From positions 171,319 through 235,318 of the IMG/VR virus record IMGVR_UViG_3300028864_000014: a DNA stretch of 64,000 bases, one strand, 5' to 3'. Made by a program: the position numbers and the translations under genes. The notes beneath the pieces were generated by a model, which worked only from the letters and a program-made list of their open reading frames with translations, ran no database searches and was not told the DNA's origin. Numbering within the stretch: position 1 is the first letter of the stretch; every line of letters starts with the position of its first letter. Positions 11,640 to 63,307 of this stretch are shown piece after piece.

Positions 11640-11825
11640 GGCTAGTCTTAGTTATTCAAATGAAAAATTCAATCTAATCAATTAGATGAAGTAATTTGAA
11701 TAGATACTAATAAATTAATTGTTAGGTCCTGGTTTACATAATAGCTAAGAATAATAGATGAAGAACACACCGACAAAGTATCAGGTGATTCTGAGATGAT
11801 AAAGGTGTGTTTGAATCTATGAATA
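11640..11825 (+). ncRNA. candidate structured RNA / cis-regulatory leader
   Basis: Intergenic; stems 11646-56/11740-50 (G-U on + strand), 11652-61/11694-703, 11764-71/11804-11, 11754-59/11815-20. Confidence 0.45.
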
Positions 11826-12711: not shown

Positions 12712-13003
12712 AAATGGTTAGTGAAACTACAGTAAAGATTGTAATTATTAGATTAATTTTTGATGTTATGATTTGTAGATATAATCAGTGAATGGAGAGT
12801 CCATTGTGGCAAGTAAAGTTGGGGGGATGATATTAATACATAAGAAAGGATGTATTTTTAAACAAGCCCGCTACTGACAGCGGTGGAGGCATGGGTGAAA
12901 ATCCAGAACCAACCTAAAACGAGGCGTTGAATATCTAGTTTATTGAGCAGTTGCAAATGTTTAAGAAAACAAAATTTAGCTACGCCTATCCTTCATACCA
13001 TTT
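12712..13003 (+). ncRNA. candidate large structured ncRNA (about 290 nt)
   Basis: GC-rich ORF-free block; ends pair (AAATGGT..TGAA / TTCA.ACCATTT) then T-run; at least five internal helices. Confidence 0.6.
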
Positions 13004-45492: not shown

Positions 45493-46266
<774 letters not shown>

Positions 46267-46267
<1 letters not shown>

Positions 46268-46677
46268 TGACAAAAGAAGAATTAAGTGATTTTATATTGG
46301 AGACATTAAAAAAATGCTATAAAGTTAAACATGAGGATTATCCAAGTATAATTTTTTGGATATATGATGAACAATTCATTAGAAAAATTAAATTAGGCAA
46401 AATAAATAATCAAGACATAAAAATTACAAATGAAATTAACGGAACTTGTATATTTCAACAAGATTTTAAAAAATTAAAATTTCGTTGTAATGATGATATT
46501 TGGACTTTTTTATTCAGATACTATTCCGATGATTACTATGATAATCAGAAATTCATGAAAGATATACTAAAAAATATTACTAATTTAAATATGTATTTAC
46601 CAACAATGAATTCATCAACAGCTAATATATCATTGAAAAATTACAAGAAAATAAGTTTATATTTAAATGATGTATAA
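46267..46677 (+). CDS. Family X paralog, array 3/13
   Basis: same motif set. Confidence 0.85.
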
Positions 46678-47065
46678 AAAAGATTTATATGATTGGTTCT
46701 GGAATAAATATAATTCCTGCTATCAAGTTAAAGTAGAATTATATCCAGATAGTGTATTCTTAGTTTATGACGAAAAATATATAAGAAAACTTAAATTGTT
46801 TAAATTAAATAATACAGAAGAGTTAATTTCAATTAATAATGTTGAAGGAACATTTTTATTTAATCAGGATAATAAATTTAGAATTTTATGGCTGAGTGAA
46901 GAATTGTGGAAGTTCTTTGAAAAAAACTATTCATATGACTACTATGATATTCAAAAACTAATAAAAAAACTACTAAAAGATCATCCAATTTTATTCGATT
47001 ATAATCCTTTACCTGGTATGATTAAAAATATATATGAAAATAGTATTATAAAATCAAGATTATAA
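46667..47065 (+). CDS. Family X paralog, array 4/13
   Basis: same motif set. Confidence 0.85.
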   Translation: MMYKKDLYDWFWNKYNSCYQVKVELYPDSVFLVYDEKYIRKLKLFKLNNTEELISINNVEGTFLFNQDNKFRILWLSEELWKFFEKNYSYDYYDIQKLIKKLLKDHPILFDYNPLPGMIKNIYENSIIKSRL

Positions 47066-47985
<920 letters not shown>

Positions 47986-47989
47986 TAAT

Positions 47990-50626
<2,637 letters not shown>

Positions 50627-50634
<8 letters not shown>

Positions 50635-51091
50635 AGAAGAATTATCAAATTGGTTGATTAGCAAAATTTTATATTGCTATCCAGTAGTAGATAAAGAATG
50701 GAATGATTACGTTTTTTATTTCTATGACGAACAATATATTAGAAAACTTAAATTGTTTAAGTTATATAATATAAAAATAACATCGCCAAATCAAGTTAAT
50801 GGAATATGCTTATTTAGTTTAAATATTAAATATAAAATTATTTACTTTCATTATGAATATGTTTGGAAATTCTTTGAAAATAATTATATAAATAATTATA
50901 TACAAATTGAAAAATTTATAACTGAAATTATAAATGATTATAAACAACTAAATAAGTATTCACCAAAAAAAAATTCACAAGGATTTAGATATCCTGAACT
51001 AATAAGAAGTAAGAAAAATTTAGAAATTAGAGAAGCTGATTGGTCATCTCTACTTCCAAGTTCATATAAAAAATTAATAGTATTGAAATAA
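50627..51091 (+). CDS. Family X paralog, array 13/13
   Basis: same motif set. Confidence 0.85.
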
Positions 51092-51121
51092 AAAAACTCA
51101 GTTAAATTAACTGAGTTTTTT
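51091..51121. terminator. ACTCAGTTAA-class palindrome (copy 2), bidirectional
   Basis: AAAAAACTCAGTTAA-a-TTAACTGAGTTTTTT between convergent genes. Confidence 0.85.
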
Positions 51122-51124
51122 ATT

Positions 51125-52870
51125 TTATGCATTTGCATTAACAATAGTATTTCTATCGTATGCTAACTTTTGAATCACAGATGAATCAACATATAAATCT
51201 TTTGTGTAACTATTATAAATATATGTAGATGCTGTAAAATCTGATAAATGATAATTGTTAATACCAACATCATAATTACCAATATTGAAATTATCACAAA
51301 CATTATTCATCTTAAAATTGCTACCAATTACATTACGATTAAACGCGTTACCAATAGTATTATAGCTAAAAACATTTCCAATGTTATTGATGTCAAATCC
51401 ATTTCCAATAGTATTAAATTGAAAATAATTCCCAATAATATTACCATTAAAATATCCACCAAAAGAATTTCCTGTATTATTATTTTGAAAATTAGAACCA
51501 ATCCTATTATTTTGCGAGCCATTTCCAATAGTATTACATAGAGCAGCATATCCAATACTATTATAACTAAAATATGATTCAATAGTATTACGAGAAAACG
51601 CTTCACCAATATAATTATGAATAAAATATTCTCCAATACTATTATAAAAAAACACATCTGAAATAGTATTATATTGAAACATGCTTCTTATTGTATTATT
51701 ATAAAAACTAGCTCCAATACTATTATTCATAATATTACTTTCAATTGTATTAAATGTAAAATTAACTCCGATACTATTGTGTTCAAAATTTCCTCCTATT
51801 GTATTATTAAAAAAACTAGCTCCAATACTATTATAACTAAAATATGATTCAATTGTATTGCAGTTAATATTATTTCCAAAAAATACAGTATTATTACAAT
51901 TAAGTATATCTCCATCTCCAATGTAATCTTGTTTTATTCTATTAGAATAAATTGTACTATCATATGTATTAAACATCAGATAATCAGTATATAAAGTGGA
52001 TGTTGGAATACTAAAATAAAGATACCAATTTGTTATATTTGGACTAGAATAACTTAAATTAGCCCATTCAAAACGTTTCCAAATAATTTGATTTGTTTGT
52101 GTTGATGGATTCACACCAATTACATTATCAATTAAACATATATAAATTTGTGTTGTCCCACTGATTAAAACAACATCACTTCTCATATATGTTGATCCTG
52201 AATTCCAAATGTTTGTAACATTCAATTGCCATCTTCTAAATTTTACTTGTCTGAAGTCAAATGGAATATCATTATTTTTTAATGTATCAACTCTTCTATA
52301 AATATATCCTTTTGCACATCCAGGCATCATACTTTGATTATTATTGAAATCATAATATATTATATCATTCGGATATAATCTTGAATACGTCTCAGGCTTT
52401 AATGTATTAACACTACTTGCAGTTACTAATAAAGGTTCTGTTGTTCCTGAATTTATAATAGTTGTTTCAGGTATTCTATGTATAGTTTGATAATCAGTAA
52501 TTAAATATGCTTGATTAGTAGTTAATCCACTATTATTAATTAATGTTACTAATCCACTATATGTGACATTTGTAACTGAATTTGTACCTCCACTAGAACT
52601 TATACTAATACCTGATGTTCCTGATGTACCATTTTGTCCAGAACTTCCATATCCAACTGAACCATTCTGTCCTGAAGTTCCTGACGTTCCTGAATTACCG
52701 GAACTTCCTGTGTTTCCAGTTGATCCATTCTGTCCAGATGTTCCAGATTTACCTGCTGTTCCACTAGTCCCATTTTGACCTGATGTACCAGAGGTGCCTG
52801 TTGATCCACCTGTTGTTCCAGATAATCTTCCTTCAACCCATTCTTCACTCGCTAACTGTATATTTACCAT
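51125..52870 (-). CDS. Family F beta-solenoid fibre/adhesin (F4)
   Basis: MVNIQLASEEWV, GTSG linker, core domain, NxIG repeats, conserved C-terminus. Confidence 0.8.
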   Translation of the reverse strand: MVNIQLASEEWVEGRLSGTTGGSTGTSGTSGQNGTSGTAGKSGTSGQNGSTGNTGSSGNSGTSGTSGQNGSVGYGSSGQNGTSGTSGISISSSGGTNSVTNVTYSGLVTLINNSGLTTNQAYLITDYQTIHRIPETTIINSGTTEPLLVTASSVNTLKPETYSRLYPNDIIYYDFNNNQSMMPGCAKGYIYRRVDTLKNNDIPFDFRQVKFRRWQLNVTNIWNSGSTYMRSDVVLISGTTQIYICLIDNVIGVNPSTQTNQIIWKRFEWANLSYSSPNITNWYLYFSIPTSTLYTDYLMFNTYDSTIYSNRIKQDYIGDGDILNCNNTVFFGNNINCNTIESYFSYNSIGASFFNNTIGGNFEHNSIGVNFTFNTIESNIMNNSIGASFYNNTIRSMFQYNTISDVFFYNSIGEYFIHNYIGEAFSRNTIESYFSYNSIGYAALCNTIGNGSQNNRIGSNFQNNNTGNSFGGYFNGNIIGNYFQFNTIGNGFDINNIGNVFSYNTIGNAFNRNVIGSNFKMNNVCDNFNIGNYDVGINNYHLSDFTASTYIYNSYTKDLYVDSSVIQKLAYDRNTIVNANA

Positions 52871-52908
52871 TAATTTTTTTTATTTGTATATATTAAAAAA
52901 CAATAAAT

Positions 52909-52939
52909 AAAAAACTCAGTTAAATTAACTGAGTTTTTT
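52909..52939. terminator. ACTCAGTTAA-class palindrome (copy 3)
   Basis: identical to copy 2. Confidence 0.85.
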
Positions 52940-52941
52940 TA

Positions 52942-53334
52942 TTAATTTCCTATGATTTTAAGTTTTATACTTTTTTTACATATCTCACAAAATACATTAA
53001 ATTGATTAAAAATTGCTTCATCTATTCCAGCTAATTTTTTTCGTTGAATTGCTAATTGCTGATCATATGTATATTCAGAATTAATAAGTCCTGATACTTG
53101 TGATTCATATGATAAAGAATCATATTCATATAATCCTTCTTGAATATAATCACCCATATCAGTGTAAATTTTCCAACCAGTACTTCCAGATGAAAATCTC
53201 AATTCTTTGTAACCATTTTCAATACATAAATCAGAATTGTTATTAAATCCAACTATTCCATCTTTACTTTTTGGTGCTTTTTCGATAGTAACTTTATCTA
53301 TCATTTTTACATACGTTCTTTTAAATATATTCAT
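52942..53334 (-). CDS. fibre-associated small protein / chaperone-like
   Basis: VSGLINSEYTYDQQLAIQR..FNQFNVFCEICK, pattern typical of tail-region proteins in Bacteroidota phages. Confidence 0.55.
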   Translation of the reverse strand: MNIFKRTYVKMIDKVTIEKAPKSKDGIVGFNNNSDLCIENGYKELRFSSGSTGWKIYTDMGDYIQEGLYEYDSLSYESQVSGLINSEYTYDQQLAIQRKKLAGIDEAIFNQFNVFCEICKKSIKLKIIGN

Positions 53335-53343
53335 AATTATTAT

Positions 53344-55305
53344 TTATTTTTGAAATTCATAAGCTCCAATATCAATAGTAGTTCCACTAATTCTATTATT
53401 TGATTTTACATCAAAAACAGATCCATAACCAGAAGTATTATCGCTATTTATTCCGTTGTCTATTAAAAAAGATTGTTCTGAAATATTAAGATTACAAACT
53501 AATACATCATCTACTACTCCTGAATTTAAAGATATTATATCAAAATAAGGACTATTAGTATCTCCACTATTATTAGTAGAAATTGATATATTTCCAATAC
53601 CTGGTCGTTCGTCATTTTCAAATGCAGAATATTCTTCAATACTTGAATTTGTATTAACTACATTATTTTGAGTTCCAGCTATTGATTTATTTCCCCAAAC
53701 TACAGTATTCTTTAATACACAGTTATTTGTACCACCTCCTGAATTTCTGACAACTGAACAATTTATAAGATTAGCAGATTCTGCTCCTCCAACTAGACTT
53801 GCTCCGTAGTTGTTAAAAATTGAGCATGATATTAATGTTCCACCACTTACTCCTCCTACATTACCATTTGAATAATTATTATATACAATTGAACTGATCA
53901 AATTTGAATTATATGATCCTGCTGAGTAACTTAAATAGTTAAGAGATTCATTAGAGTTAATAGAGCAATTTACTAAATTCGAAATAAAAAGTGTTGTTCC
54001 TTTAGCAGCAGTGCTAATGTTTTTATTTATATCAGAATTTGAAAATGATGATAAAAAACCTGCTGAAACACTTCCAACTGTAGAATTATTACTTATAAAG
54101 CAGTTCGTTAGTGATGAATTTATTGCTCCTGCTGATCCACTATATCCATATCGGTCTCCCATATCAGAATTAACTGTTCCAGTATTAACATTACTTGAAA
54201 TTATAGAATTACTAATTGATGAATTTATAACTCCTACTCCACCATTTATATTTCCAATTGATGAATTAAAAGATACTAAGCAGTTATTAAGATTTGCTCC
54301 ATAAACACCACTCCATGATGAATACCAGTAATCGTAAGATTCAATATTATTAATTATTTGACAATTTGATAATATTAATGTACCTGAAGAATGAATTCCT
54401 GCACATAAATATGGTATTGAGTCATTGAAAGAATCCGATATTTGAAATCCGTTTACAACTGATTTTATACCTGAACTACAATAAAGAGTAGTATATGAAG
54501 AAGTTATCTGAGAACCTAATAAATTACCAGACATTATACTTTTATTTTTTGGTACAGGAACAAATAAATCTATATTTCCAGATGGTAATCTTAATATTTC
54601 TTTGTAAGATACCATATCACGCTCATATAGAGAACTTTCAGTACCAATAAATCCTCCGAATATATTTATTCCAGTCTTAAGAAGAAATGATGCAGATCTG
54701 GCATCTCCAATTGTTCTTAATGTAGTAGGTAAATAAGTAATTCCACTTTCAGATCCTTTAACAAAAATTGCATCACCAGAATTTGACAAATCAATAGCTG
54801 TTTGAATATTCTTATACGAATTTGTCCATGATAATCCATCATTAGTATCTAATCCATTATCTCCATCAACATATCTTATAACTGAACCTATTATCTCAAA
54901 TCCATTTTCATCAATTCCAACAGTAGCGATATTTTTATAAATAAGTCCTAGCCTCCAAGTAATGCCATTATCTGATGATGACATTGTATACATATATTCA
55001 CCTACTTCTGTTGGATATTCTAAATTGTCAAATAAAAAATTATTTGGAAAACTTAATGACACATAATCGTTAAGTTTAATTTTTAAATATAATTGAACAT
55101 ATTTACTCATATCAACATTTCCTGTATTTACAGTTACTGTTAATCCTGACGCTGTTGATATATCATATACTTTAATATTCTTGTCTAATATAATAGAACC
55201 TGATACAACTTGTTCAGTGTTATATTGAATTGTGTTACCATCTGTTAAATTTCCTACTATATCAGTTACCCAGTTTTGATTAGCTAAATATATTATTTCA
55301 TCCAT
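53344..55305 (-). CDS. right-handed parallel beta-helix (pectin-lyase-like) tail spike/adhesin
   Basis: IYLANQNWV tag; YVDGDNGLDTNDGLSWTNSYKNIQTAID; GINIFGGFIGTE; terminal RISGTTIDIGAYEF (choice-of-anchor Q-like). Confidence 0.8.
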   Translation of the reverse strand: MDEIIYLANQNWVTDIVGNLTDGNTIQYNTEQVVSGSIILDKNIKVYDISTASGLTVTVNTGNVDMSKYVQLYLKIKLNDYVSLSFPNNFLFDNLEYPTEVGEYMYTMSSSDNGITWRLGLIYKNIATVGIDENGFEIIGSVIRYVDGDNGLDTNDGLSWTNSYKNIQTAIDLSNSGDAIFVKGSESGITYLPTTLRTIGDARSASFLLKTGINIFGGFIGTESSLYERDMVSYKEILRLPSGNIDLFVPVPKNKSIMSGNLLGSQITSSYTTLYCSSGIKSVVNGFQISDSFNDSIPYLCAGIHSSGTLILSNCQIINNIESYDYWYSSWSGVYGANLNNCLVSFNSSIGNINGGVGVINSSISNSIISSNVNTGTVNSDMGDRYGYSGSAGAINSSLTNCFISNNSTVGSVSAGFLSSFSNSDINKNISTAAKGTTLFISNLVNCSINSNESLNYLSYSAGSYNSNLISSIVYNNYSNGNVGGVSGGTLISCSIFNNYGASLVGGAESANLINCSVVRNSGGGTNNCVLKNTVVWGNKSIAGTQNNVVNTNSSIEEYSAFENDERPGIGNISISTNNSGDTNSPYFDIISLNSGVVDDVLVCNLNISEQSFLIDNGINSDNTSGYGSVFDVKSNNRISGTTIDIGAYEFQK

Positions 55306-55355
55306 TTATATTTTTATTTCTATATATAAATTAAATAAAATTAACAATTGAAAAT

Positions 55356-55391
55356 AAAAAACTCAGTTAAAATATTTTAACTGAGTTTTTT
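55356..55391. terminator. ACTCAGTTAA-class palindrome (copy 4), perfect 36 bp
   Basis: AAAAAACTCAGTTAAAAT|ATTTTAACTGAGTTTTTT. Confidence 0.85.
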
Positions 55392-55406
55392 TAGGTATTT
55401 TATGAG

Positions 55407-57197
55407 TTAAGCATTTGCACTCACAATAACAGTCTTATCATATATTAACTTTAACTGTGATGAAGAATTACTAAATATTTCTTTTGTATATGAATTATAA
55501 ACATAAGTAGATGATAAAAAATTTGTTCCAGTAACACCACATTGAATAAAATTGTGAGCAAAATTACTTCCTATTGTATTACCACTAAATGTCTCTATTA
55601 TTGAATTATTTGTAAAATAATTTCCTACTGTATTAATACCAAAATAATTTGATATTGAATTATGTCCAAAATCAGTTCCTATTATATTAGTACCAAATCC
55701 ACTTTTTATTGTATTATACATAAAATTAGTTCCTATTGTATTAGCACCAAAATTACTTCCTATTGAATTATATCCAAAATTAGTTCCTATTTTATTATTA
55801 CCAAAATTTCCTCCTATTACATTCAAAGAAGAATTGTTTCCTATCGTGTTAGTACCAAAATTTCCTCCTACCACATTTAAAGTGAAAGCGTTTCCTATTA
55901 TATTATATCCAAAATTGATATCTATAATATTATTAGTGAGTCCATATCCTATAAAATTAAATTGACAATTACGTTCAATTGAATTATAAGTAAAACTATC
56001 ACCTATTACATTAAAATTAAAACTATTTCCTATTGTATTATCAGAAAAACTTCCTCCTATTGAATTAATAGCGAAACTGTTTCCTAATTTATTTTTATTA
56101 AATGCATATGAAATAGAATTATTATAAAAACTATCTCCTATTGTATTAGTATTAAAACTATTTCCTATTGTGTTCTCATAAAAATTGTTTCCTATAGTAT
56201 TATTATAAAAACCAGATCCAAGTGTGACTGAATTATTGTTTGATATTATATTTGTTGATGACTGTTCAATTGAAATATTGAAACTCGATGAATAATCCCA
56301 AAACATATTATAATCTGTATATCCAGTCGAACATGGAATATTAACACTGAACAAAGCCCAACTATTTTTATATGGACTTGTGTAACTTAAATTACCCCAT
56401 TCAAATAATTTCCAAATTGAATCAATGGATGGATCAATTCCAGTCACAAGATTATTCATACAAATATAAATCTTAGTTGTTCCACCACTTAAAACAACAT
56501 CATTCTTATTGTATGTCGTACTATTATTCCAAATGTTAGTAACATTCAATTGAAATCTTCTGAACTTTACCTTTCTAAAATCAAAAGGTATGTCATTAAC
56601 CTGAATTGTGTCTATCCTTCTATAAATATATCCTTTAGTACAACCAGATACCATACTTTGATTATTAGTATAATTATAATAAATAATATCCTGAGGATAT
56701 AATGCTGAATATGCTTCTGGTTTTAATGAATTAATACCACTTGCTGTAACTAATAAAGGTTCTGTTGTTCCTGAACTTAACTCAGTTGTTTTAGGAATTA
56801 CATATACTGTCTGATAATCTGTTATTAAATATTGATTACCTATTGTTAATCCATTTGAAGATATTAAATTAGATAAACTATTATATGTCAAATTTGTAAC
56901 TGTACTTGTACTTCCACTAGGAGAATTACCAGATGTTCCAGATGTTCCTGAACCTGATGTACCAGAAGTTCCTGAATTTCCAGCAGATCCATTCTGTCCT
57001 GAAGTTCCTGACGTTCCTGAATTACCAGAACTTCCTGTGTTTCCAGTTGATCCATTCTGTCCAGATGTGCCTGATCTACCTGCTGTTCCACTAGTTCCAT
57101 TTTGACCTGATGTACCAGACGTACCTGTTGATCCACCTGTTGTTCCAGATAACCTTCCTTCAACCCATTCTTCACTCACCAATTGAATATTTATCAT
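55407..57197 (-). CDS. Family F beta-solenoid fibre/adhesin (F3)
   Basis: MINIQLVSEEWV; first ~190 bp nearly identical to F4. Confidence 0.8.
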   Translation of the reverse strand: MINIQLVSEEWVEGRLSGTTGGSTGTSGTSGQNGTSGTAGRSGTSGQNGSTGNTGSSGNSGTSGTSGQNGSAGNSGTSGTSGSGTSGTSGNSPSGSTSTVTNLTYNSLSNLISSNGLTIGNQYLITDYQTVYVIPKTTELSSGTTEPLLVTASGINSLKPEAYSALYPQDIIYYNYTNNQSMVSGCTKGYIYRRIDTIQVNDIPFDFRKVKFRRFQLNVTNIWNNSTTYNKNDVVLSGGTTKIYICMNNLVTGIDPSIDSIWKLFEWGNLSYTSPYKNSWALFSVNIPCSTGYTDYNMFWDYSSSFNISIEQSSTNIISNNNSVTLGSGFYNNTIGNNFYENTIGNSFNTNTIGDSFYNNSISYAFNKNKLGNSFAINSIGGSFSDNTIGNSFNFNVIGDSFTYNSIERNCQFNFIGYGLTNNIIDINFGYNIIGNAFTLNVVGGNFGTNTIGNNSSLNVIGGNFGNNKIGTNFGYNSIGSNFGANTIGTNFMYNTIKSGFGTNIIGTDFGHNSISNYFGINTVGNYFTNNSIIETFSGNTIGSNFAHNFIQCGVTGTNFLSSTYVYNSYTKEIFSNSSSQLKLIYDKTVIVSANA

Positions 57198-57249
57198 AGT
57201 TAATTTTATTTCTATATATAAATTAAACTAACTGATTAAACAATAAATA

Positions 57250-57278
57250 AAAAACTCAGTTAAATTAACTGAGTTTTT
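57250..57278. terminator. ACTCAGTTAA-class palindrome (copy 5)
   Basis: with flank CAATAAAT, 38 bp identical to copy 3 region. Confidence 0.85.
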
Positions 57279-57296
57279 AATTTTTTATAAATCTAA

Positions 57297-58874
57297 TTAT
57301 TCAATGACATCTACTATTGTTGTCACATCATATACTAACTTGTTAAGCCCTGTTGAATCAACATATAAGTTTTTAGTATAGGCTAAATAGATATATGTTG
57401 ATGATGATAAATCTAATCCAGATCCAAAATTATCACATATATTGTTCATAGTAAAATTACTTCCAATTGTATTAGTATTAAAGTTACTTCCAATTGAATT
57501 ATTTTGAAAGTTACTTCCAATTGAATTATAATTAAAATCACTTACAATTGTATTACCACTAAAAATACTTTCAATAGAATTATTATTAAAATTACTTCCA
57601 ATTGCATTTCTTTCAAATCCATATCCAATTGAAGTATTAGTATTAAAATCACTTCCAATTGAATTTTTTTGAAAGTTACTTAATATAGTATTATATTGAA
57701 AGTTGCTTCCTATATTATTATATTGATAATAATTATCCACACTATTAAAATTGAAATTATTTGAAATTGTATTATAGTTGAAATTTGCGCCAATTGTATC
57801 ATTATTGGAAAATAGACTTCCAATTGAATTATTATTAAAATTATTTCCAATATTAGAGTTGGAACTAAAATCTGCTCCAATTAAATTATTATAAAAACTA
57901 CTTGCAATATTATTACTAGTAAAATTACCTCCAATTATATTATTGTAAAAATTATTTGAAATTGTATTATAGTTGAAATTATTTGAAATTGTATTACCAC
58001 TAAAATTAATATCAATATTATTATTTTGAAAATATGATTCAATATTATTAGAGTTAAAATTATCTCCTATGTTGTCATTTTTATTAAAATCACTTCCAAT
58101 TATATTATTGTAAAAATTATTTGAAATTGTATTATGGTAAAAATTATTTGAAATTGTATTACCACTAAAAAATTTTCCAATTGAATTATACATAAAGTAA
58201 TTTTCAATACTATTATCATTAAAATTGTCTCCTATTGTATTACCTGAAAAACCAGTTCCTATTTTATTATTCTTAAAATTGCTTCCTATTGTATTACTAT
58301 TAAAACCATCTCCTATTGTATTATCACGAAAATTACTTCCTAAAATTATAGAATTATTTTGATCTATTCTATAATTTAGTGCTCCTATTTTATTATTAAA
58401 AGCAGTTGAATAATCAACAAAAAAATTATAAACTGTAACTCCACTACTTATATAATTATTTACAATCTTAAAATTTCTAAAATCAAAAGGCATATCATTA
58501 TTCTGTATTGTATCTATCCTTCTATAAATATATCCTTTAGTAGAACCATGTATAACATTAGTATTATTATTGAAATCATAATATATAATATCCTTAGGAT
58601 ATAATGCTGAATATGCTTCTGGTTTTAATGTATTAACTCCACTAGCTGTTACTAATAAAGGTTCAATTATACCAGTGAAAGTATTTCCATAATATGCATC
58701 AATATAAATAGTCTGATAATCTGTAATCAAATACTGACTTCCAATTGTTAATACACTATTATTAATCAAATCGCCCAATTCATTATATGTAACATTAGTT
58801 ACTGAAGAACCACCAGTACCTCCGCCTAATTGTCCTTCAACCCACTCTTCACTTGCTAATTGTATATTTATCAT
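57297..58874 (-). CDS. Family F beta-solenoid fibre/adhesin (F2)
   Basis: MINIQLASEEWV; core lacks the RRWQ insert; very regular 9-aa repeats. Confidence 0.8.
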   Translation of the reverse strand: MINIQLASEEWVEGQLGGGTGGSSVTNVTYNELGDLINNSVLTIGSQYLITDYQTIYIDAYYGNTFTGIIEPLLVTASGVNTLKPEAYSALYPKDIIYYDFNNNTNVIHGSTKGYIYRRIDTIQNNDMPFDFRNFKIVNNYISSGVTVYNFFVDYSTAFNNKIGALNYRIDQNNSIILGSNFRDNTIGDGFNSNTIGSNFKNNKIGTGFSGNTIGDNFNDNSIENYFMYNSIGKFFSGNTISNNFYHNTISNNFYNNIIGSDFNKNDNIGDNFNSNNIESYFQNNNIDINFSGNTISNNFNYNTISNNFYNNIIGGNFTSNNIASSFYNNLIGADFSSNSNIGNNFNNNSIGSLFSNNDTIGANFNYNTISNNFNFNSVDNYYQYNNIGSNFQYNTILSNFQKNSIGSDFNTNTSIGYGFERNAIGSNFNNNSIESIFSGNTIVSDFNYNSIGSNFQNNSIGSNFNTNTIGSNFTMNNICDNFGSGLDLSSSTYIYLAYTKNLYVDSTGLNKLVYDVTTIVDVIE

Positions 58875-58910
58875 TTATCATTTTATTTCTATATATAAAT
58901 TAACAAACTA

Positions 58911-58944
58911 AAAAACTCAGTTAAATTATTTTAACTGAGTTTTT
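58911..58944. terminator. ACTCAGTTAA-class palindrome (copy 6)
   Basis: AAAAACTCAGTTAA-attatt-TTAACTGAGTTTTT. Confidence 0.85.
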
Positions 58945-58946
58945 GT

Positions 58947-59561
58947 TTAATTAATATCAGATGTTATATTTAACGATTGATCAAATATTCCCTCACAATA
59001 CATATACTTATTGTCCAATTTTATAATATATAAAATACTATCAATATTTAAATCAGATGATGCAAAATCCTTTATACATTTAAAAGATTCTTTATGAATA
59101 GCATAACTATGAGTGAATAATTTACCTGGAATTTTTTCAATTCCTTTATGTACTTTATCTCTGAATATTCCTTTAATGATATTATTCTCCTTCCTGAATT
59201 GTATCATATTATCAAAATAAAATAAATTCCAATTATTGTTCTTTAAAAAATTAAAACAAATATCTAAATGATAATCTAATTTTTTTTCAATCTCTATGTT
59301 ATCCTGATTAAAACAAACATCATCCTCAAATATAAATATCTTATCATAATCATTTTCTATAGCATCATCTATACAACTAATATGAGATGATTTACAAGAT
59401 TTAGTAGAACTAATATCATCAGTGATAGGAACAATTTTCTTATATTTAGTTATATTTAATATTCTAAACATATTCATTATGTTATCATATCTATCAGTCC
59501 TAATTGGTAAATTTATAAAATATACCATATCAAAATATTCAAAATAATTATGCAGTAGCAT
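58947..59561 (-). CDS. glycosyltransferase family 25
   Basis: VYFINLPIRTDR, SCKSSH, IFIFEDD, WNLFY, THSYAI, IFDQ..SDI. Confidence 0.85.
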   Translation of the reverse strand: MLLHNYFEYFDMVYFINLPIRTDRYDNIMNMFRILNITKYKKIVPITDDISSTKSCKSSHISCIDDAIENDYDKIFIFEDDVCFNQDNIEIEKKLDYHLDICFNFLKNNNWNLFYFDNMIQFRKENNIIKGIFRDKVHKGIEKIPGKLFTHSYAIHKESFKCIKDFASSDLNIDSILYIIKLDNKYMYCEGIFDQSLNITSDIN

Positions 59562-61074
59562 CTACTATTGTTACTTTATCATAAATTAATTTTCTTTGAC
59601 CTGATGAATTAACAAATAAATCTTTAGAATATTGATTATAAACATGAGTGGATGATGTGAAATTTAATCCACTATGATCAAAATTAAAATAATCACAAAC
59701 ATTATTCATTGTAAAATTGCTTCCAATTGTATTACTATTAAAATAACTTCCAATTGTATTATATTGAAAATTACTTCCAATTGTATTACTATTAAAATAA
59801 CTTTCTATACTATTATTTTGAAAATACATTATAATATTATTAAATGTAAATACATTTTCAATCGTATTATTTTGAAAATTACTTCCGATAGTATTATAAT
59901 AAAAATTACCAAAAATAGTATTATTATTAAATAAACTTCCTATACTATTATTTTGAAAAGCATTTCCAATTGTATTATACTGAAAATTATTCAAAATTGT
60001 ATTCCAATTAATCATACCTCCAATTGTATTAAATCTAAAATTTATTCCAATAATATTACTGTCAAAATAATCATCTATTGAATTATTTTGAAAAAAATCA
60101 TCTAATAAATTATCAGAAAAATTGTTTTTTATTGAATTATTATTAAATCCAAAACCAATCAAATTATTGAAAAAATATGAACCTATTTTATTAAAACTAA
60201 ATGAATTAAAAATAGTATTGTTGAAAAAATATGAACCTATTTTATTGTTATTAAATTGATAACCAAATATTACATTATTTGAATATGTAATCATATCTGA
60301 TCCATATATATTTGACATAGGAATTAAAAATTGTTTATCTATAATATTATTAAAACTAGTATTATAATCATTCCAATTACTCCACATATTATAATCTGTA
60401 TAACCAGTAGAACAAGGTAAATATAAAGCATTAAACTGATATCCTACACTTGTCGTACTTACATATGATTTGTTACTTATCATATAAAATGTATTCCAAT
60501 AATTAGTATTACTTAACTGATTACCTGTATTTCCACTTACTATACTAACATACAGAATATTATTTGTATTACCGCTTAAAACAACATTATTACGATTATA
60601 TGTTGTTCCAGAATTCCAAACTTCACTAACATTTATTTGCCATCTTCTAAACTTAACATTCCTAAAATCAAAAGGAATATCATTGTTCTGTGCAGTATCT
60701 ATCCTTCTATAAATGTAACCTTTAGTACATCCAATTACCATAGTCTGATCACTATAGTAATTATAGTAAATTATATCCTGAGGAAATAAACTTGAATATG
60801 CCTCAGGCTTTAATTTATTAACTCCACTTGCTGTAACTAATAAAGGTTCTGTCATTCCACTATTTATATCAGTTGTATTAGGTATCTTATGTACTGTTTG
60901 ATAATCAGTAATTAAATATTGTCCACCAATAGTTAAATTATTAGTATTAATTAATGATGTTAATTCATTATATGTAACATCAGTTACTGAATTTGTGTTG
61001 CCTGTTGATCCACCAGTACCTCCGCCAAACTGTTCCTCAACCCATTCTTCACTTGCTAATTGTATATTTATCAT
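59548..61074 (-). CDS. Family F beta-solenoid fibre/adhesin (F1)
   Basis: MINIQLASEEWV; core, repeats and C-terminus as other F genes. Confidence 0.8.
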   Translation of the reverse strand: MINIQLASEEWVEEQFGGGTGGSTGNTNSVTDVTYNELTSLINTNNLTIGGQYLITDYQTVHKIPNTTDINSGMTEPLLVTASGVNKLKPEAYSSLFPQDIIYYNYYSDQTMVIGCTKGYIYRRIDTAQNNDIPFDFRNVKFRRWQINVSEVWNSGTTYNRNNVVLSGNTNNILYVSIVSGNTGNQLSNTNYWNTFYMISNKSYVSTTSVGYQFNALYLPCSTGYTDYNMWSNWNDYNTSFNNIIDKQFLIPMSNIYGSDMITYSNNVIFGYQFNNNKIGSYFFNNTIFNSFSFNKIGSYFFNNLIGFGFNNNSIKNNFSDNLLDDFFQNNSIDDYFDSNIIGINFRFNTIGGMINWNTILNNFQYNTIGNAFQNNSIGSLFNNNTIFGNFYYNTIGSNFQNNTIENVFTFNNIIMYFQNNSIESYFNSNTIGSNFQYNTIGSYFNSNTIGSNFTMNNVCDYFNFDHSGLNFTSSTHVYNQYSKDLFVNSSGQRKLIYDKVTIVDATA

Positions 61075-61088
61075 TTATTATTTTTATT

Positions 61089-61100
61089 TCTATATATAAA
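61089..61100 (-). promoter_or_regulatory. putative late promoter TTWATATATA(G/C) (representative copy)
   Basis: TATATA core also at 26088, ~28697, 40718, 43491, 52887, 55321, 57213, 58890, 61405, each shortly upstream of a minus-strand ATG. Confidence 0.7.
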
Positions 61101-61118
61101 ATCTTATATTTGAAGAAC

Positions 61119-61198
61119 AGCCTAATCAATTAGAGACGCGTTCCCCAAAAGTCATCAATTACACTCAAGCCTAATCAATTAGAGACGCGTTCCCCAAA
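61119..61198. repeat. exact 31-bp direct repeat x2, 18-bp spacer
   Basis: AGCCTAATCAATTAGAGACGCGTTCCCCAAA at 61119-49 and 61168-98. Confidence 0.95.
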
Positions 61199-61307
61199 CT
61201 ACCAACTCTGAACACTTGAAATAACCTCACCTTATGACTAACACAACACGCAAAATAAACCCACCATGAAATATATGATGAGCAACTTCAATAGCTTAAA
61301 AATGTTT

Positions 61308-61391
61308 TTAACCTACTACAATAGGATCATCTCCAGGTGAAGTTCCCTTAAATGCCTTAGTAGTCGTACTGGTTGTGATAATGTCTTCCAT
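61308..61391 (-). CDS. 27-aa peptide behind late promoter
   Basis: MEDIITTSTTTKAFKGTSPGDDPIVVG*; TTTATATATAGA ~14 nt upstream. Confidence 0.45.
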   Translation of the reverse strand: MEDIITTSTTTKAFKGTSPGDDPIVVG

Positions 61392-61490
61392 ATTACTTTT
61401 CTTCTATATATAAAAAAACCTTCTATTATACTTCAGATAATTTTTTTATTCCAAAATTTTTTATTACCTTTATAACTTAAATATAATTGT

Positions 61491-62683
<1,193 letters not shown>

Positions 62684-62692
62684 CACTGAGAA

Positions 62693-63035
62693 TAATACCT
62701 CAAATTTTTTTCCCAAAAAAATTTTTTGATTCCTAAATATAACTCTTTATTGTACAAAATTACTTAACATAAAAAAACTCTGAGAAATAACTCTAAAATT
62801 TTTCCCCAAAAAAAAATTTTGAATTTAACATATAGTAACAATTTAACTGGGTAAAATAACTCTAAATTTTTACCAAAAAAAATTTTTTGAATTTCAATAT
62901 CCAACTTAATTTATTTAAAAAATACTCTGATACAAAATACTCAAAAAATTTCCAAAAAAAAAAAATTGATTTCTCATATTTCAATATTTTAACTGGGTAA
63001 AATACCTCTAAAATTTTTCCAAAAAAAAAATTCAA
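62693..63035. repeat. about five degenerate A/T-tract repeats (AATAxCTCTAAAATTTTTCCAAAAAAA)
   Basis: Visible at ~62693, 62788, 62855, 62935, 63001; TTTAACTGGGTAAAATA exact at 62842 and 62988. Confidence 0.75.
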
Positions 63036-63101
63036 ATATTGATATAAAAAACACATGGGGAATTTTTCAAATATTAACATACTCAAATATTAACAATTTT
63101 T

Positions 63102-63307
63102 CGCCATGGCTGCCCTATACCTGCATACACACTCTACACGCGCAAGTCGCTCAACACCATCACCAAGTCTAGTAGGCAAGTGTTCATGAACATCCGACTC
63201 AAGTGCGAATTCGTATTAACACTTAGTAAGTCACGGCCGACTTTCGCGCGTCGTCATCTCCGACAAATGTTCATGAACTTCTTCGCTCCCTCTCTTGATG
63301 GACAACC
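63102..63307 (-). ncRNA. candidate GC-rich structured RNA (or ssDNA hairpin), about 205 nt
   Basis: 12-bp helix 63138-49/63238-51, nested hairpin 63196-232, terminal stem with two G-U on minus strand, two GTTCATGAAC palindromes. Confidence 0.55.

What the first reader, a model, noticed from the sequence alone, without database searches (positions are those of the whole stretch)
61119..61410. Late micro-transcript: 27-aa peptide followed by two exact 31-bp repeats
Seen: late-type promoter (61405), ORF MEDIITTSTTTKAFKGTSPGDDPIVVG, then non-coding G-rich RNA with two identical 31-nt units at 49-nt period, just upstream of the fibre array. Each unit holds CTAAT-CA-ATTAG. The 13-mer CTAATCAATTAGA also occurs in the 11.67-kb RNA candidate. 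Established: phages use solitary CRISPR-like repeats (Racr) and ToxI-like repeat mimics as anti-defence RNAs. Inference: RNA decoy, protein operator pair, or recombination site for the cassettes.
Basis: partly seen in the sequence, partly recalled or inferred. Interest (0 to 1): 0.6.

Follow-up and report, generated by a model that had tools for sequence, protein, structure and literature searches.

The report
Conserved box heading phage fibre arrays
The two identical 31-base repeats are real. They carry a 20-base G+C-rich box that a related giant peat phage keeps at the same spot, just upstream of its tail-fibre genes, so the box is probably a regulatory recognition site and not an anti-defence RNA decoy.

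Summary
In detail: there are two exact 31-mers (61119-61149, 61168-61198; period 49), a 27-codon ORF behind a recurrent promoter-like box, and G-rich spacer RNA-sense sequence upstream of the first fibre gene.

The window is the end of a 235-kb fragment of a roughly 0.7-Mb, 24% G+C, T4-like peat phage. Only 20 nt of each repeat is conserved (core TTGGGGAAYGCGTCTCTAAT).
- A related phage (B) has two non-identical copies, 32 nt apart, at the orthologous spacer.
- The window's phage (A) has a third copy 9.3 kb away, beyond the window end, in front of an array of six small LRR genes.
- A third relative (E) lacks the box as a clean indel of about 52 nt.

The palindrome, the ACGCGT site, the micro-ORF and the 49-nt period are not conserved.

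No CRISPR-like array, ToxN-like gene or Rfam family matches, and no RNA data exist.

My best reading (0.35) is a sequence-specific protein-binding box on DNA that marks the heads of host-interaction gene arrays. The main rival (0.2) is a transcribed, ops-like leader site for the phage's own NusG-family protein. The function is unproven, and interest is modest.

The parts
61168..61198 (-). Repeat copy 1 (far from the fibre gene). The conserved 20-nt core is 61197-61178.
   Evidence: The core is conserved in phage B and at the second locus of phage A.
61119..61149 (-). Repeat copy 2, identical to copy 1. Its core is 61148-61129 and ends 29 nt before the fibre gene's promoter-like box.
61150..61167 (-). 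18-nt spacer between the copies. It is unrelated to the sequence after copy 2 and is not conserved in the relative.
61088..61101 (-). Promoter-like AT box of the first fibre gene (TTTTATATATAGAA type).
59548..61074 (-). First gene (508 aa) of the seven-gene fibre array 51125-61074. Its N-terminal adaptor is shared with the other array genes.
61199..61307 (-). G-rich non-coding stretch specific to this phage. It includes a weak terminator-like hairpin at 61283-61259.
61308..61391 (-). 27-codon micro-ORF. Its coding status is doubtful and it is absent in relatives.
61402..61412 (-). Promoter-like AT box in front of the micro-ORF.
61491..62147 (+). Divergent 218-aa gene of the multi-copy paralogue family. 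It bounds the spacer on the other side.
58911..58944 (.). One of five near-identical two-way intrinsic terminators between array genes. The others are at 57250-57278, 55356-55391, 52909-52939 and 51091-51121.
   Evidence: 11 terminator-like sites found; 1.1 expected

Best explanation
The 31-mers are this phage's version of a conserved 20-nt G+C-rich box (TTGGGGAAYGCGTCTCTAAT). The box lies in one or two direct copies, always on the sense strand, 20-32 nt upstream of the promoter-like AT box of the first gene in an array of host-interaction genes (tail fibres or small LRR proteins).

I take it to be a recognition site on duplex DNA for a sequence-specific regulator, phage- or host-encoded, that adds an extra control input to the promoter(s) at the array head. 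The exact 31-nt identity in this phage reflects a recent re-duplication or gene conversion of an older two-copy element.

- **Shown:** the existence of the box, its conservation, its rarity, its position and orientation, and its presence or absence among relatives.
- **Inferred:** that a protein binds it, that binding is to DNA, and that it regulates transcription.
For: - **Conservation.** Phage B has two copies at the orthologous divergent spacer, one 19/20 identical and one 18/19 with a 1-nt gap. The rest of the spacer is rearranged. Flanking proteins are 62% (fibre) and 83% (GT25) identical (alignment z 10.2).
- **Second locus.** A third copy (17/20) in phage A lies 9.3 kb away, 32 nt before the AT box and ATG of the first of six LRR genes. 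Homologous flanks extend the module to about 60-100 nt (z 8.9 against B).
- **Rarity.** There are no other copies with up to 3-4 mismatches in the 235-kb record or in about 430 kb of related contigs. In IMG/VR and the metagenome set the box occurs only in these two phages.
- **Chance.** The 11-mer GCGTCTCTAAT has a chance probability of about 7e-8 per position at this composition (my own estimate).
- **Dispensable add-on.** Relative E keeps the promoter box and the array but lacks the element as a clean indel of about 52 nt.
- **Position.** It sits directly upstream of a position-specific promoter-like box.
Against: - The spacing is not fixed. Copy to copy it is 49 against 32 nt. Core to promoter box it is 29, 20 and 32 nt. 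This argues against a face-of-helix activator or a rigid dimer on direct repeats.
- The conserved core is asymmetric, with no dyad.
- No cognate DNA-binding protein has been identified.
- T4-type late promoters are not known to need upstream sites (my own knowledge).
- Only two independent lineages carry the box, and no RNA or binding data exist.
- The strong G>C skew of all three modules on the sense strand would also fit a transcribed element.
Confidence: 0.35

Rival explanations
1. The box is a transcribed leader element that works like ops or nut. It would be read by RNA polymerase coming from an upstream promoter. It would then be recognised, as non-template DNA or nascent RNA, by an elongation factor such as the phage's own NusG-family protein. 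That would make transcription of the array processive, with read-through of the intrinsic terminators between array genes or resistance to Rho.
For: - The phage encodes a 170-aa NGN+KOW protein. Pfam NusG scores 45.8 bits, above its cut-off. It scores below every NCBIfam equivalog cut-off for NusG, LoaP, UpxY and RfaH, as expected of a divergent paralogue.
- This protein is conserved at 80% and 52% identity in related contigs, and at 31-37% in the 634-735-kb reference huge phages.
- The box always lies on the sense strand at array heads, and its spacing is free, which suits a site read during elongation.
- In phage A, both loci have an upstream co-directional unit with only a weak terminator-like hairpin before the box.
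- The fibre array holds five strong terminators, and phage B's array holds one internal terminator.
- Known NusG paralogues act at leader sites of long surface-structure operons (PMC11685472).
Against: - The box does not match ops (GGCGGTAGCGTG) or the Bacteroides opsX hairpin YGCGNAGCR quoted in PMC11685472. By my reading it also does not match the elemental pause consensus.
- No conserved hairpin or covariation was found (7 predicted pairs, none compensatory).
- In phage B no recognisable promoter box lies upstream of the element, and the only one lies downstream.
- Each fibre gene has its own promoter box, and the LRR array has no internal terminator, so read-through is not obviously needed.
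- The NusG gene is about 125 kb away and may serve general transcription.
Confidence: 0.2
2. The box is a small mobile or recombination-prone regulatory cassette, like the PeSL units of T4-type phages. It would spread with its adjoining promoter between array heads and have little function of its own.
For: - Presence or absence behaves as a discrete indel among close relatives.
- The same 60-100-nt module, with its adjoining promoter box, sits at two unrelated arrays in one genome.
- A degenerate copy lies in another spacer of relative E.
- The genome holds other repeated cassettes: a 28-nt direct repeat flanking a 92-aa ORF, and terminator-promoter units between fibres.
- PeSLs are documented in PMC2839356 and PMC4122927.
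Against: - The core is far better conserved than its flanks across lineages, which points to selection on the sequence itself.
- It has no terminal inverted repeats and no stem-loop.
- There are only two loci per genome.
- Identity between the loci (about 20-30 nt) is short for homologous recombination.
Confidence: 0.15
3. The box is a strand-specific DNA processing site. One possibility is a nicking site that loads the sliding clamp as a T4-type late 'enhancer' for the promoters downstream. Another is part of a transcription-primed replication origin.
For: - The core is asymmetric and contains GTCTC/CGTCTC-type words.
- Its orientation is conserved, its spacing is free, and it lies upstream of a run of separate late-type promoters.
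- The sense strand is G-rich and could form R-loops.
- T4 late activation by a tracking clamp loaded at nicks is established knowledge (my own recollection, not checked here).
Against: No nickase has been linked to the box, and no read-end pile-ups could be assessed because only contigs were available. The idea is purely by analogy.
Confidence: 0.07
4. The repeats encode an anti-defence RNA decoy, either a CRISPR-repeat mimic (Racr or solitary repeat unit) or a ToxI-like antitoxin repeat.
For: The element has a repeat-spacer-repeat look in this one phage, and there is a promoter box upstream.
Against: - An 18-mer core scan of 185,579 species genomes gave 7 single hits of chance type and no arrays.
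- Spacers are 18 and 12-13 nt.
- Phage B's two copies differ by an indel and in their 3' tails.
- The second locus has one copy.
- No Rfam match was found, and the fold z-score is -1.2.
- The downstream gene is a fibre with no ToxN-type family hit.
- No CRISPR-like array is present in the 235 kb.
Confidence: 0.03
5. It is a neutral, recent duplication with no function.
For: The two 31-mers are 100% identical, and no population variants were seen.
Against: The core is conserved in a second lineage and at a second locus while the surrounding spacer has diverged. The A-B-A layout is not a simple tandem duplication.
Confidence: 0.05

Closest known systems
Repeated regulator sites in a divergent early/late spacer of a phage (for example the phi29 p4 sites, or P2/P4 late activator sites)
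   Same: Short conserved boxes in more than one copy, between divergently transcribed gene blocks and just upstream of a late-type promoter. They are rare in the genome.
   Different: Those sites are dyad-symmetric with fixed phasing to the promoter. Here the core is asymmetric and its spacing varies. The comparison is from my own knowledge and was not tested.
ops / opsX leader sites read by NusG paralogues (RfaH; Bacteroides UpxY), PMC11685472
   Same: A short specific box at the head of long gene sets for surface structures, oriented with transcription. A NusG-family gene is present in the genome.
   Different: There is no sequence match to ops or to the opsX hairpin. No pause hairpin was found. 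It has not been shown that the box is transcribed. The NusG gene is not the first gene of the array, as upxY is.
PeSL promoter-terminator cassettes of T4-type phages (PMC2839356, PMC4122927)
   Same: A repeated non-coding module tied to a promoter, with presence or absence varying between close relatives, in variable regions of a T4-like genome.
   Different: PeSLs are stem-loop plus promoter units present in many copies. This box has no stem-loop and occurs at two loci. The terminator-plus-promoter units between the fibre genes resemble PeSLs more closely.
Solitary CRISPR repeats / Racr RNAs, and ToxI-type antitoxin repeats
   Same: Short direct repeats in a phage spacer.
   Different: There is no matching CRISPR repeat anywhere searched. 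Repeat and spacer lengths do not fit. There is no partner nuclease gene. The copies are not uniform in the relative.
lambda nut / rrn boxA
   Same: By eye, part of the core (GCGTCTCTAA) resembles boxA (GCTCTTTAA) with one gap, and it sits at an operon head.
   Different: The resemblance is recalled from memory only. There is no boxB-like conserved hairpin. The host is unknown, so its rrn boxA could not be compared.

Membership tests
CRISPR-like solitary repeat / Racr | Near-identity to a CRISPR repeat of a host or of another genome | tested here: not met
   The 18-mer core scan of genome contigs gave 7 single hits in unrelated taxa and no arrays. Only exact matching was possible, so diverged repeats could be missed.
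CRISPR-like solitary repeat / Racr | Uniform repeats with spacers of CRISPR length, or a single repeat with the repeat's own hairpin | tested here: not met
   Spacers are 18 nt (phage A) and 12-13 nt (phage B). B's copies differ by an indel and in their 3' tails. No conserved hairpin was found.
CRISPR-like solitary repeat / Racr | A cognate Cas system in the host that the RNA would titrate | not testable with these tools
   The host is unknown. Only weak hints point to Bacteroidota.
ToxI-like type III antitoxin | Abutting tandem repeats of about 34-36 nt, followed by a terminator and a ToxN/AbiE-type endoribonuclease gene | tested here: not met
   The repeats are separated by unrelated sequence, and Tandem Repeats Finder finds no array. 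The next gene is a 508-aa fibre with no such family hit.
ops / RfaH-type recruitment site | The 12-nt ops consensus or the opsX non-template hairpin YGCGNAGCR with a pause hairpin | tested here: not met
   Compared by eye with the sequences quoted in PMC11685472. Only YGCG is shared. No hairpin is supported.
ops / RfaH-type recruitment site | Location in the transcribed leader, between transcription start and first start codon | tested here: inconclusive
   Upstream promoter-like units exist at both loci of phage A. In phage B the only recognisable promoter box lies downstream of the element. No RNA data exist.
ops / RfaH-type recruitment site | A specialised NusG paralogue encoded in the same genome | tested here: met
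   A 170-aa NGN+KOW protein is present. It scores above the Pfam cut-off and below all NCBIfam equivalog cut-offs.
PeSL mobile regulatory cassette | A composite stem-loop (terminator) plus promoter, repeated around ORFs of variable regions | tested here: not met
   The core has no stem-loop and occurs at only two loci. The inter-fibre terminator-plus-box units do fit this description.
Any Rfam RNA family | A covariance-model match | tested here: not met
   There were no gathering-score hits in the window. Only chance-level miRNA or snoRNA hits (E 0.4-9) appeared in 60900-61600.

The most novel reading that the evidence does not exclude
The box is the recruitment site of a phage-encoded specialised NusG paralogue, a viral counterpart of ops/RfaH or opsX/UpxY. 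On this reading, a giant phage carries its own elongation switch. The switch would be loaded at the heads of its host-range gene arrays (fibres, LRR proteins) and would decide whether polymerase reads through the terminators that otherwise isolate each cassette.
Probability: 0.15. Interest if true: 0.7.

Novelty: new member of a known kind. Interest (0 to 1): 0.35.

Why it matters
Phages of about 0.7 Mb carry long arrays of exchangeable fibre and LRR genes that probably set host range, and nothing is known about how these arrays are controlled. A rare, conserved, oriented box at two array heads is a concrete handle on that question. It can be used as bait to find the factor that reads it, and as a marker to find array heads in related genomes. 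If the factor proved to be the phage's NusG-family protein, it would to my knowledge be the first virus-encoded specialised NusG system. If it is an ordinary operator, the finding is a routine piece of annotation.

Tried and rejected
- **Alternative genetic code.** Opening TAG adds almost nothing to long frames, and aragorn's 16 tRNAs include no suppressor. I kept the standard code.
- **Giant eukaryotic virus.** The NCLDV capsid family was not found (though the control was silent). A T4-type portal in a relative, gp9/10-like fibre parts, tRNA arrays and a T4-like layout point to a huge myovirus.
- **Pseudogene or DGR template.** Neither blastn nor tblastx of 61100-61420 against the 235 kb found anything beyond the promoter box.
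- **Stable RNA.** Fold z-scores are -1.2 (sense) and -0.4 (antisense).
- **Two-copy pattern scan of metagenomes.** It gave 52 loci, but all except the two phages are unrelated tandem repeats that happen to contain the 11-mer.
- **Upstream AT part of the module as a promoter class.** Its matches in this AT-rich genome show no consistent placement before ORFs.
- **Host-type -33/-7 promoter inside the box.** I considered this by eye and rejected it. The best-conserved bases would then fall in the spacer, not in the hexamers.
- **Known phage genomes.** blastn of the module against 50,697 phage records, including the 634-735-kb ones, found nothing.
- **Relatives and other records.** Relatives cannot be drawn for a virus record, and metagenome records cannot be searched whole.
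- **RNA evidence.** No listed run is on record as RNA. Laying four peat runs gave contigs only, which break at the 31-mer as k=31 assemblies must.

Full report
**What is there**

On the - strand, reading from the divergent 218-aa gene (61491-62147, +) towards the first fibre gene (59548-61074, -), the 416-nt spacer holds, in order:
- a promoter-like AT box (61412-61402);
- a 27-codon ORF (61391-61308);
- a weak terminator-like hairpin (61283-61259);
- a G-rich stretch;
- two exact 31-mers (61198-61168 and 61149-61119) separated by 18 unrelated bases;
- a second AT box (61101-61088);
- the ATG at 61074.

The 31-mer occurs nowhere else in the window or in the 235-kb record.

**Genome context**

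The window is the last 64 kb of a 235,318-bp IMG/VR virus record with 24% G+C, which CheckV rates 33% complete. The record carries 16 tRNA genes, ribonucleotide reductase, ClpB, a fused Mre11/Rad50-type protein and an NAD ligase. The standard genetic code fits. The same sequence is found in many peat metagenomes. Relatives sit on contigs of up to 711 kb, and one carries a T4-type portal. This is therefore a T4-like phage of roughly 0.7 Mb from peat, not a gut phage. A Bacteroidota host is hinted at only weakly: a Bacteroidales-labelled homologue and -7-like TAnnTTTG boxes before the paralogue genes.

The AT box of the TATATA[GA][AT]A type precedes 41 of 280 ORFs, against 2-5 at control positions, mostly 20-29 nt before the ATG. 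It stands before each fibre gene. The fibre genes are separated by five near-identical two-way intrinsic terminators and share N-terminal adaptors at 73-83% DNA identity. Each is therefore its own promoter-gene-terminator cassette.

**Comparative evidence**

IMG/VR holds only identical copies of this phage, and four peat runs show no variants in the spacer. Three other comparisons carry information.
- **Phage B.** I reached it through the closest fibre homologue, which is 62% identical; its GT25 is 83% identical. It has the same layout of divergent paralogue genes and fibre array. In the orthologous 187-nt spacer it has two direct copies of a 19-20-nt sequence that matches the 5' two-thirds of the 31-mer, 32 nt apart. 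The rest of the spacer is rearranged. The micro-ORF, its promoter box, the ACGCGT site and the CTAAT..ATTAG palindrome are absent.
- **Second locus in phage A.** Searching the longer IMG/VR records of phage A found a third copy (17/20) 9.3 kb away, beyond the window's end and in the opposite orientation. It lies 32 nt before an AT box and the ATG of the first of six tandem small LRR genes. Its flanks align with phage B's spacer (z 8.9), so the unit is a module of about 60-100 nt. A remnant of a second copy (the G run only) lies at the 32-33-nt period.
- **Phage E.** This third relative (GT25 81% identical) keeps the divergent layout and the AT box but lacks the element as a clean gap of about 52 nt. 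A degenerate 11-nt match lies in another of its spacers.

No further copies were found in about 430 kb of related contigs, in IMG/VR or in known phage genomes. The other metagenome hits are unrelated tandem repeats.

**What this excludes**

A neutral duplication is excluded for the core, because it is conserved where the flanks are not. Only the exact 31-nt identity is recent.

A CRISPR-like or ToxI-like RNA is not supported:
- there is no matching array in 185,579 species genomes;
- repeat and spacer geometry do not fit;
- the copies in phage B are not uniform;
- there is a single copy at the LRR locus;
- there is no partner nuclease gene;
- there is no Rfam hit;
- there is no stable or covarying fold.

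The 13-mer shared with position 11674 lies in the non-conserved tail of the repeat, and I treat it as chance.

The micro-ORF has a GC3 of 0.26, against 0.08-0.11 in two long genes checked. I estimate a binomial probability of about 0.02 for 7 or more of 27 codons at a rate of 0.1. It is missing in relatives, so I do not count it as part of the element.

**Mechanism**

The following is shown. A rare, oriented, asymmetric 20-nt G+C-rich box, in one or two copies, lies just upstream of the promoter-like box of the first gene in two arrays of host-interaction genes. It is conserved across two lineages and is dispensable in a third.

- **Favoured reading (0.35).** The box is a protein recognition site on DNA that adds a control input at array heads. 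Its position upstream of a promoter box, its rarity and its add-on character fit. The variable spacing and the lack of a dyad count against it.
- **Main rival (0.2).** The box is read during elongation. The phage encodes its own NusG-family protein, which is divergent from NusG, LoaP, UpxY and RfaH by the curated cut-offs. That protein is conserved in the clade and in the 634-735-kb reference phages. NusG paralogues are known to load at short leader sites of surface-structure operons (PMC11685472). Free spacing and fixed orientation suit this reading. The lack of any match to ops or opsX, the lack of a pause hairpin, the downstream position of the only recognisable promoter in phage B, and the terminator-free LRR array speak against it.
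- **Minor readings.** These are a PeSL-like mobile cassette (PMC2839356, PMC4122927) and a strand-specific nick or origin site.

**Verdict**

This is a real, conserved cis-element whose reader is unknown. It is a new motif of a familiar kind. It is modestly interesting, and more so if it proves to be linked to the phage's NusG-family protein.

Noticed in passing
G000:C1:106947-107243 region (L127:1285-1797, - strand), about 125 kb upstream of the finding: The phage encodes a NusG-family protein (170 aa, NGN+KOW) that scores below all NCBIfam equivalog cut-offs. A 79-aa S1-domain gene and a RelB-like 91-aa gene lie nearby. Homologues occur in the 634-735-kb reference huge phages.
   Followed up: partly
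beyond the window end: L125:389-3402 (- strand; G002:C1:26388-29401): An array of six small LRR genes (126-192 aa) is headed by the third copy of the box. The 92-aa ORF just upstream is flanked on both sides by a 28-nt direct repeat containing a small stem-loop.
   Followed up: partly
window 51091-58944 (five sites): Near-identical two-way intrinsic terminators, each followed by the AT promoter box and a conserved fibre N-terminus. These composite units look like the PeSL cassettes of T4-type phages and could drive cassette shuffling.
   Followed up: partly
window 62690-63060 and 63100-63300; 63565/63785: About five copies of a 60-110-bp unit containing A-run/T-run blocks are followed by a 50% G+C non-coding island and then a 46-bp exact repeat 220 bp apart. 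There is no long ORF. This could be an origin or a terminal region.
   Followed up: no
window 12794-12990: A non-coding G+C-rich island (0.44 in a 24% genome) lies between two + strand genes. There is no Rfam match at E up to 1, and the fold z-score is -1.1. It is one of only a few non-tRNA G+C islands outside genes in the 235 kb.
   Followed up: partly
window 45494-51091 and 61491-62683: At least 14 tandem paralogues (about 130-220 aa) with no Pfam or PHROG hit flank the fibre array on both sides, in this phage and in relatives. Their upstream regions carry TAnnTTTG-like boxes typical of Bacteroidota promoters.
   Followed up: partly
L035, L041, L054, L073 and other loci from one metagenome (Ga0190315): Unrelated contigs carry tandem arrays of a hairpin unit whose 3' arm contains the same 11-mer as the box. 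This explains most hits of the metagenome scan and has no evident link to the phage.
   Followed up: no
L094 / L125:8380-9074 (beyond the window end): About 700 nt of non-coding sequence upstream of a 333-aa fibre-like gene includes a G+C-rich hairpin of about 38 nt.
   Followed up: no
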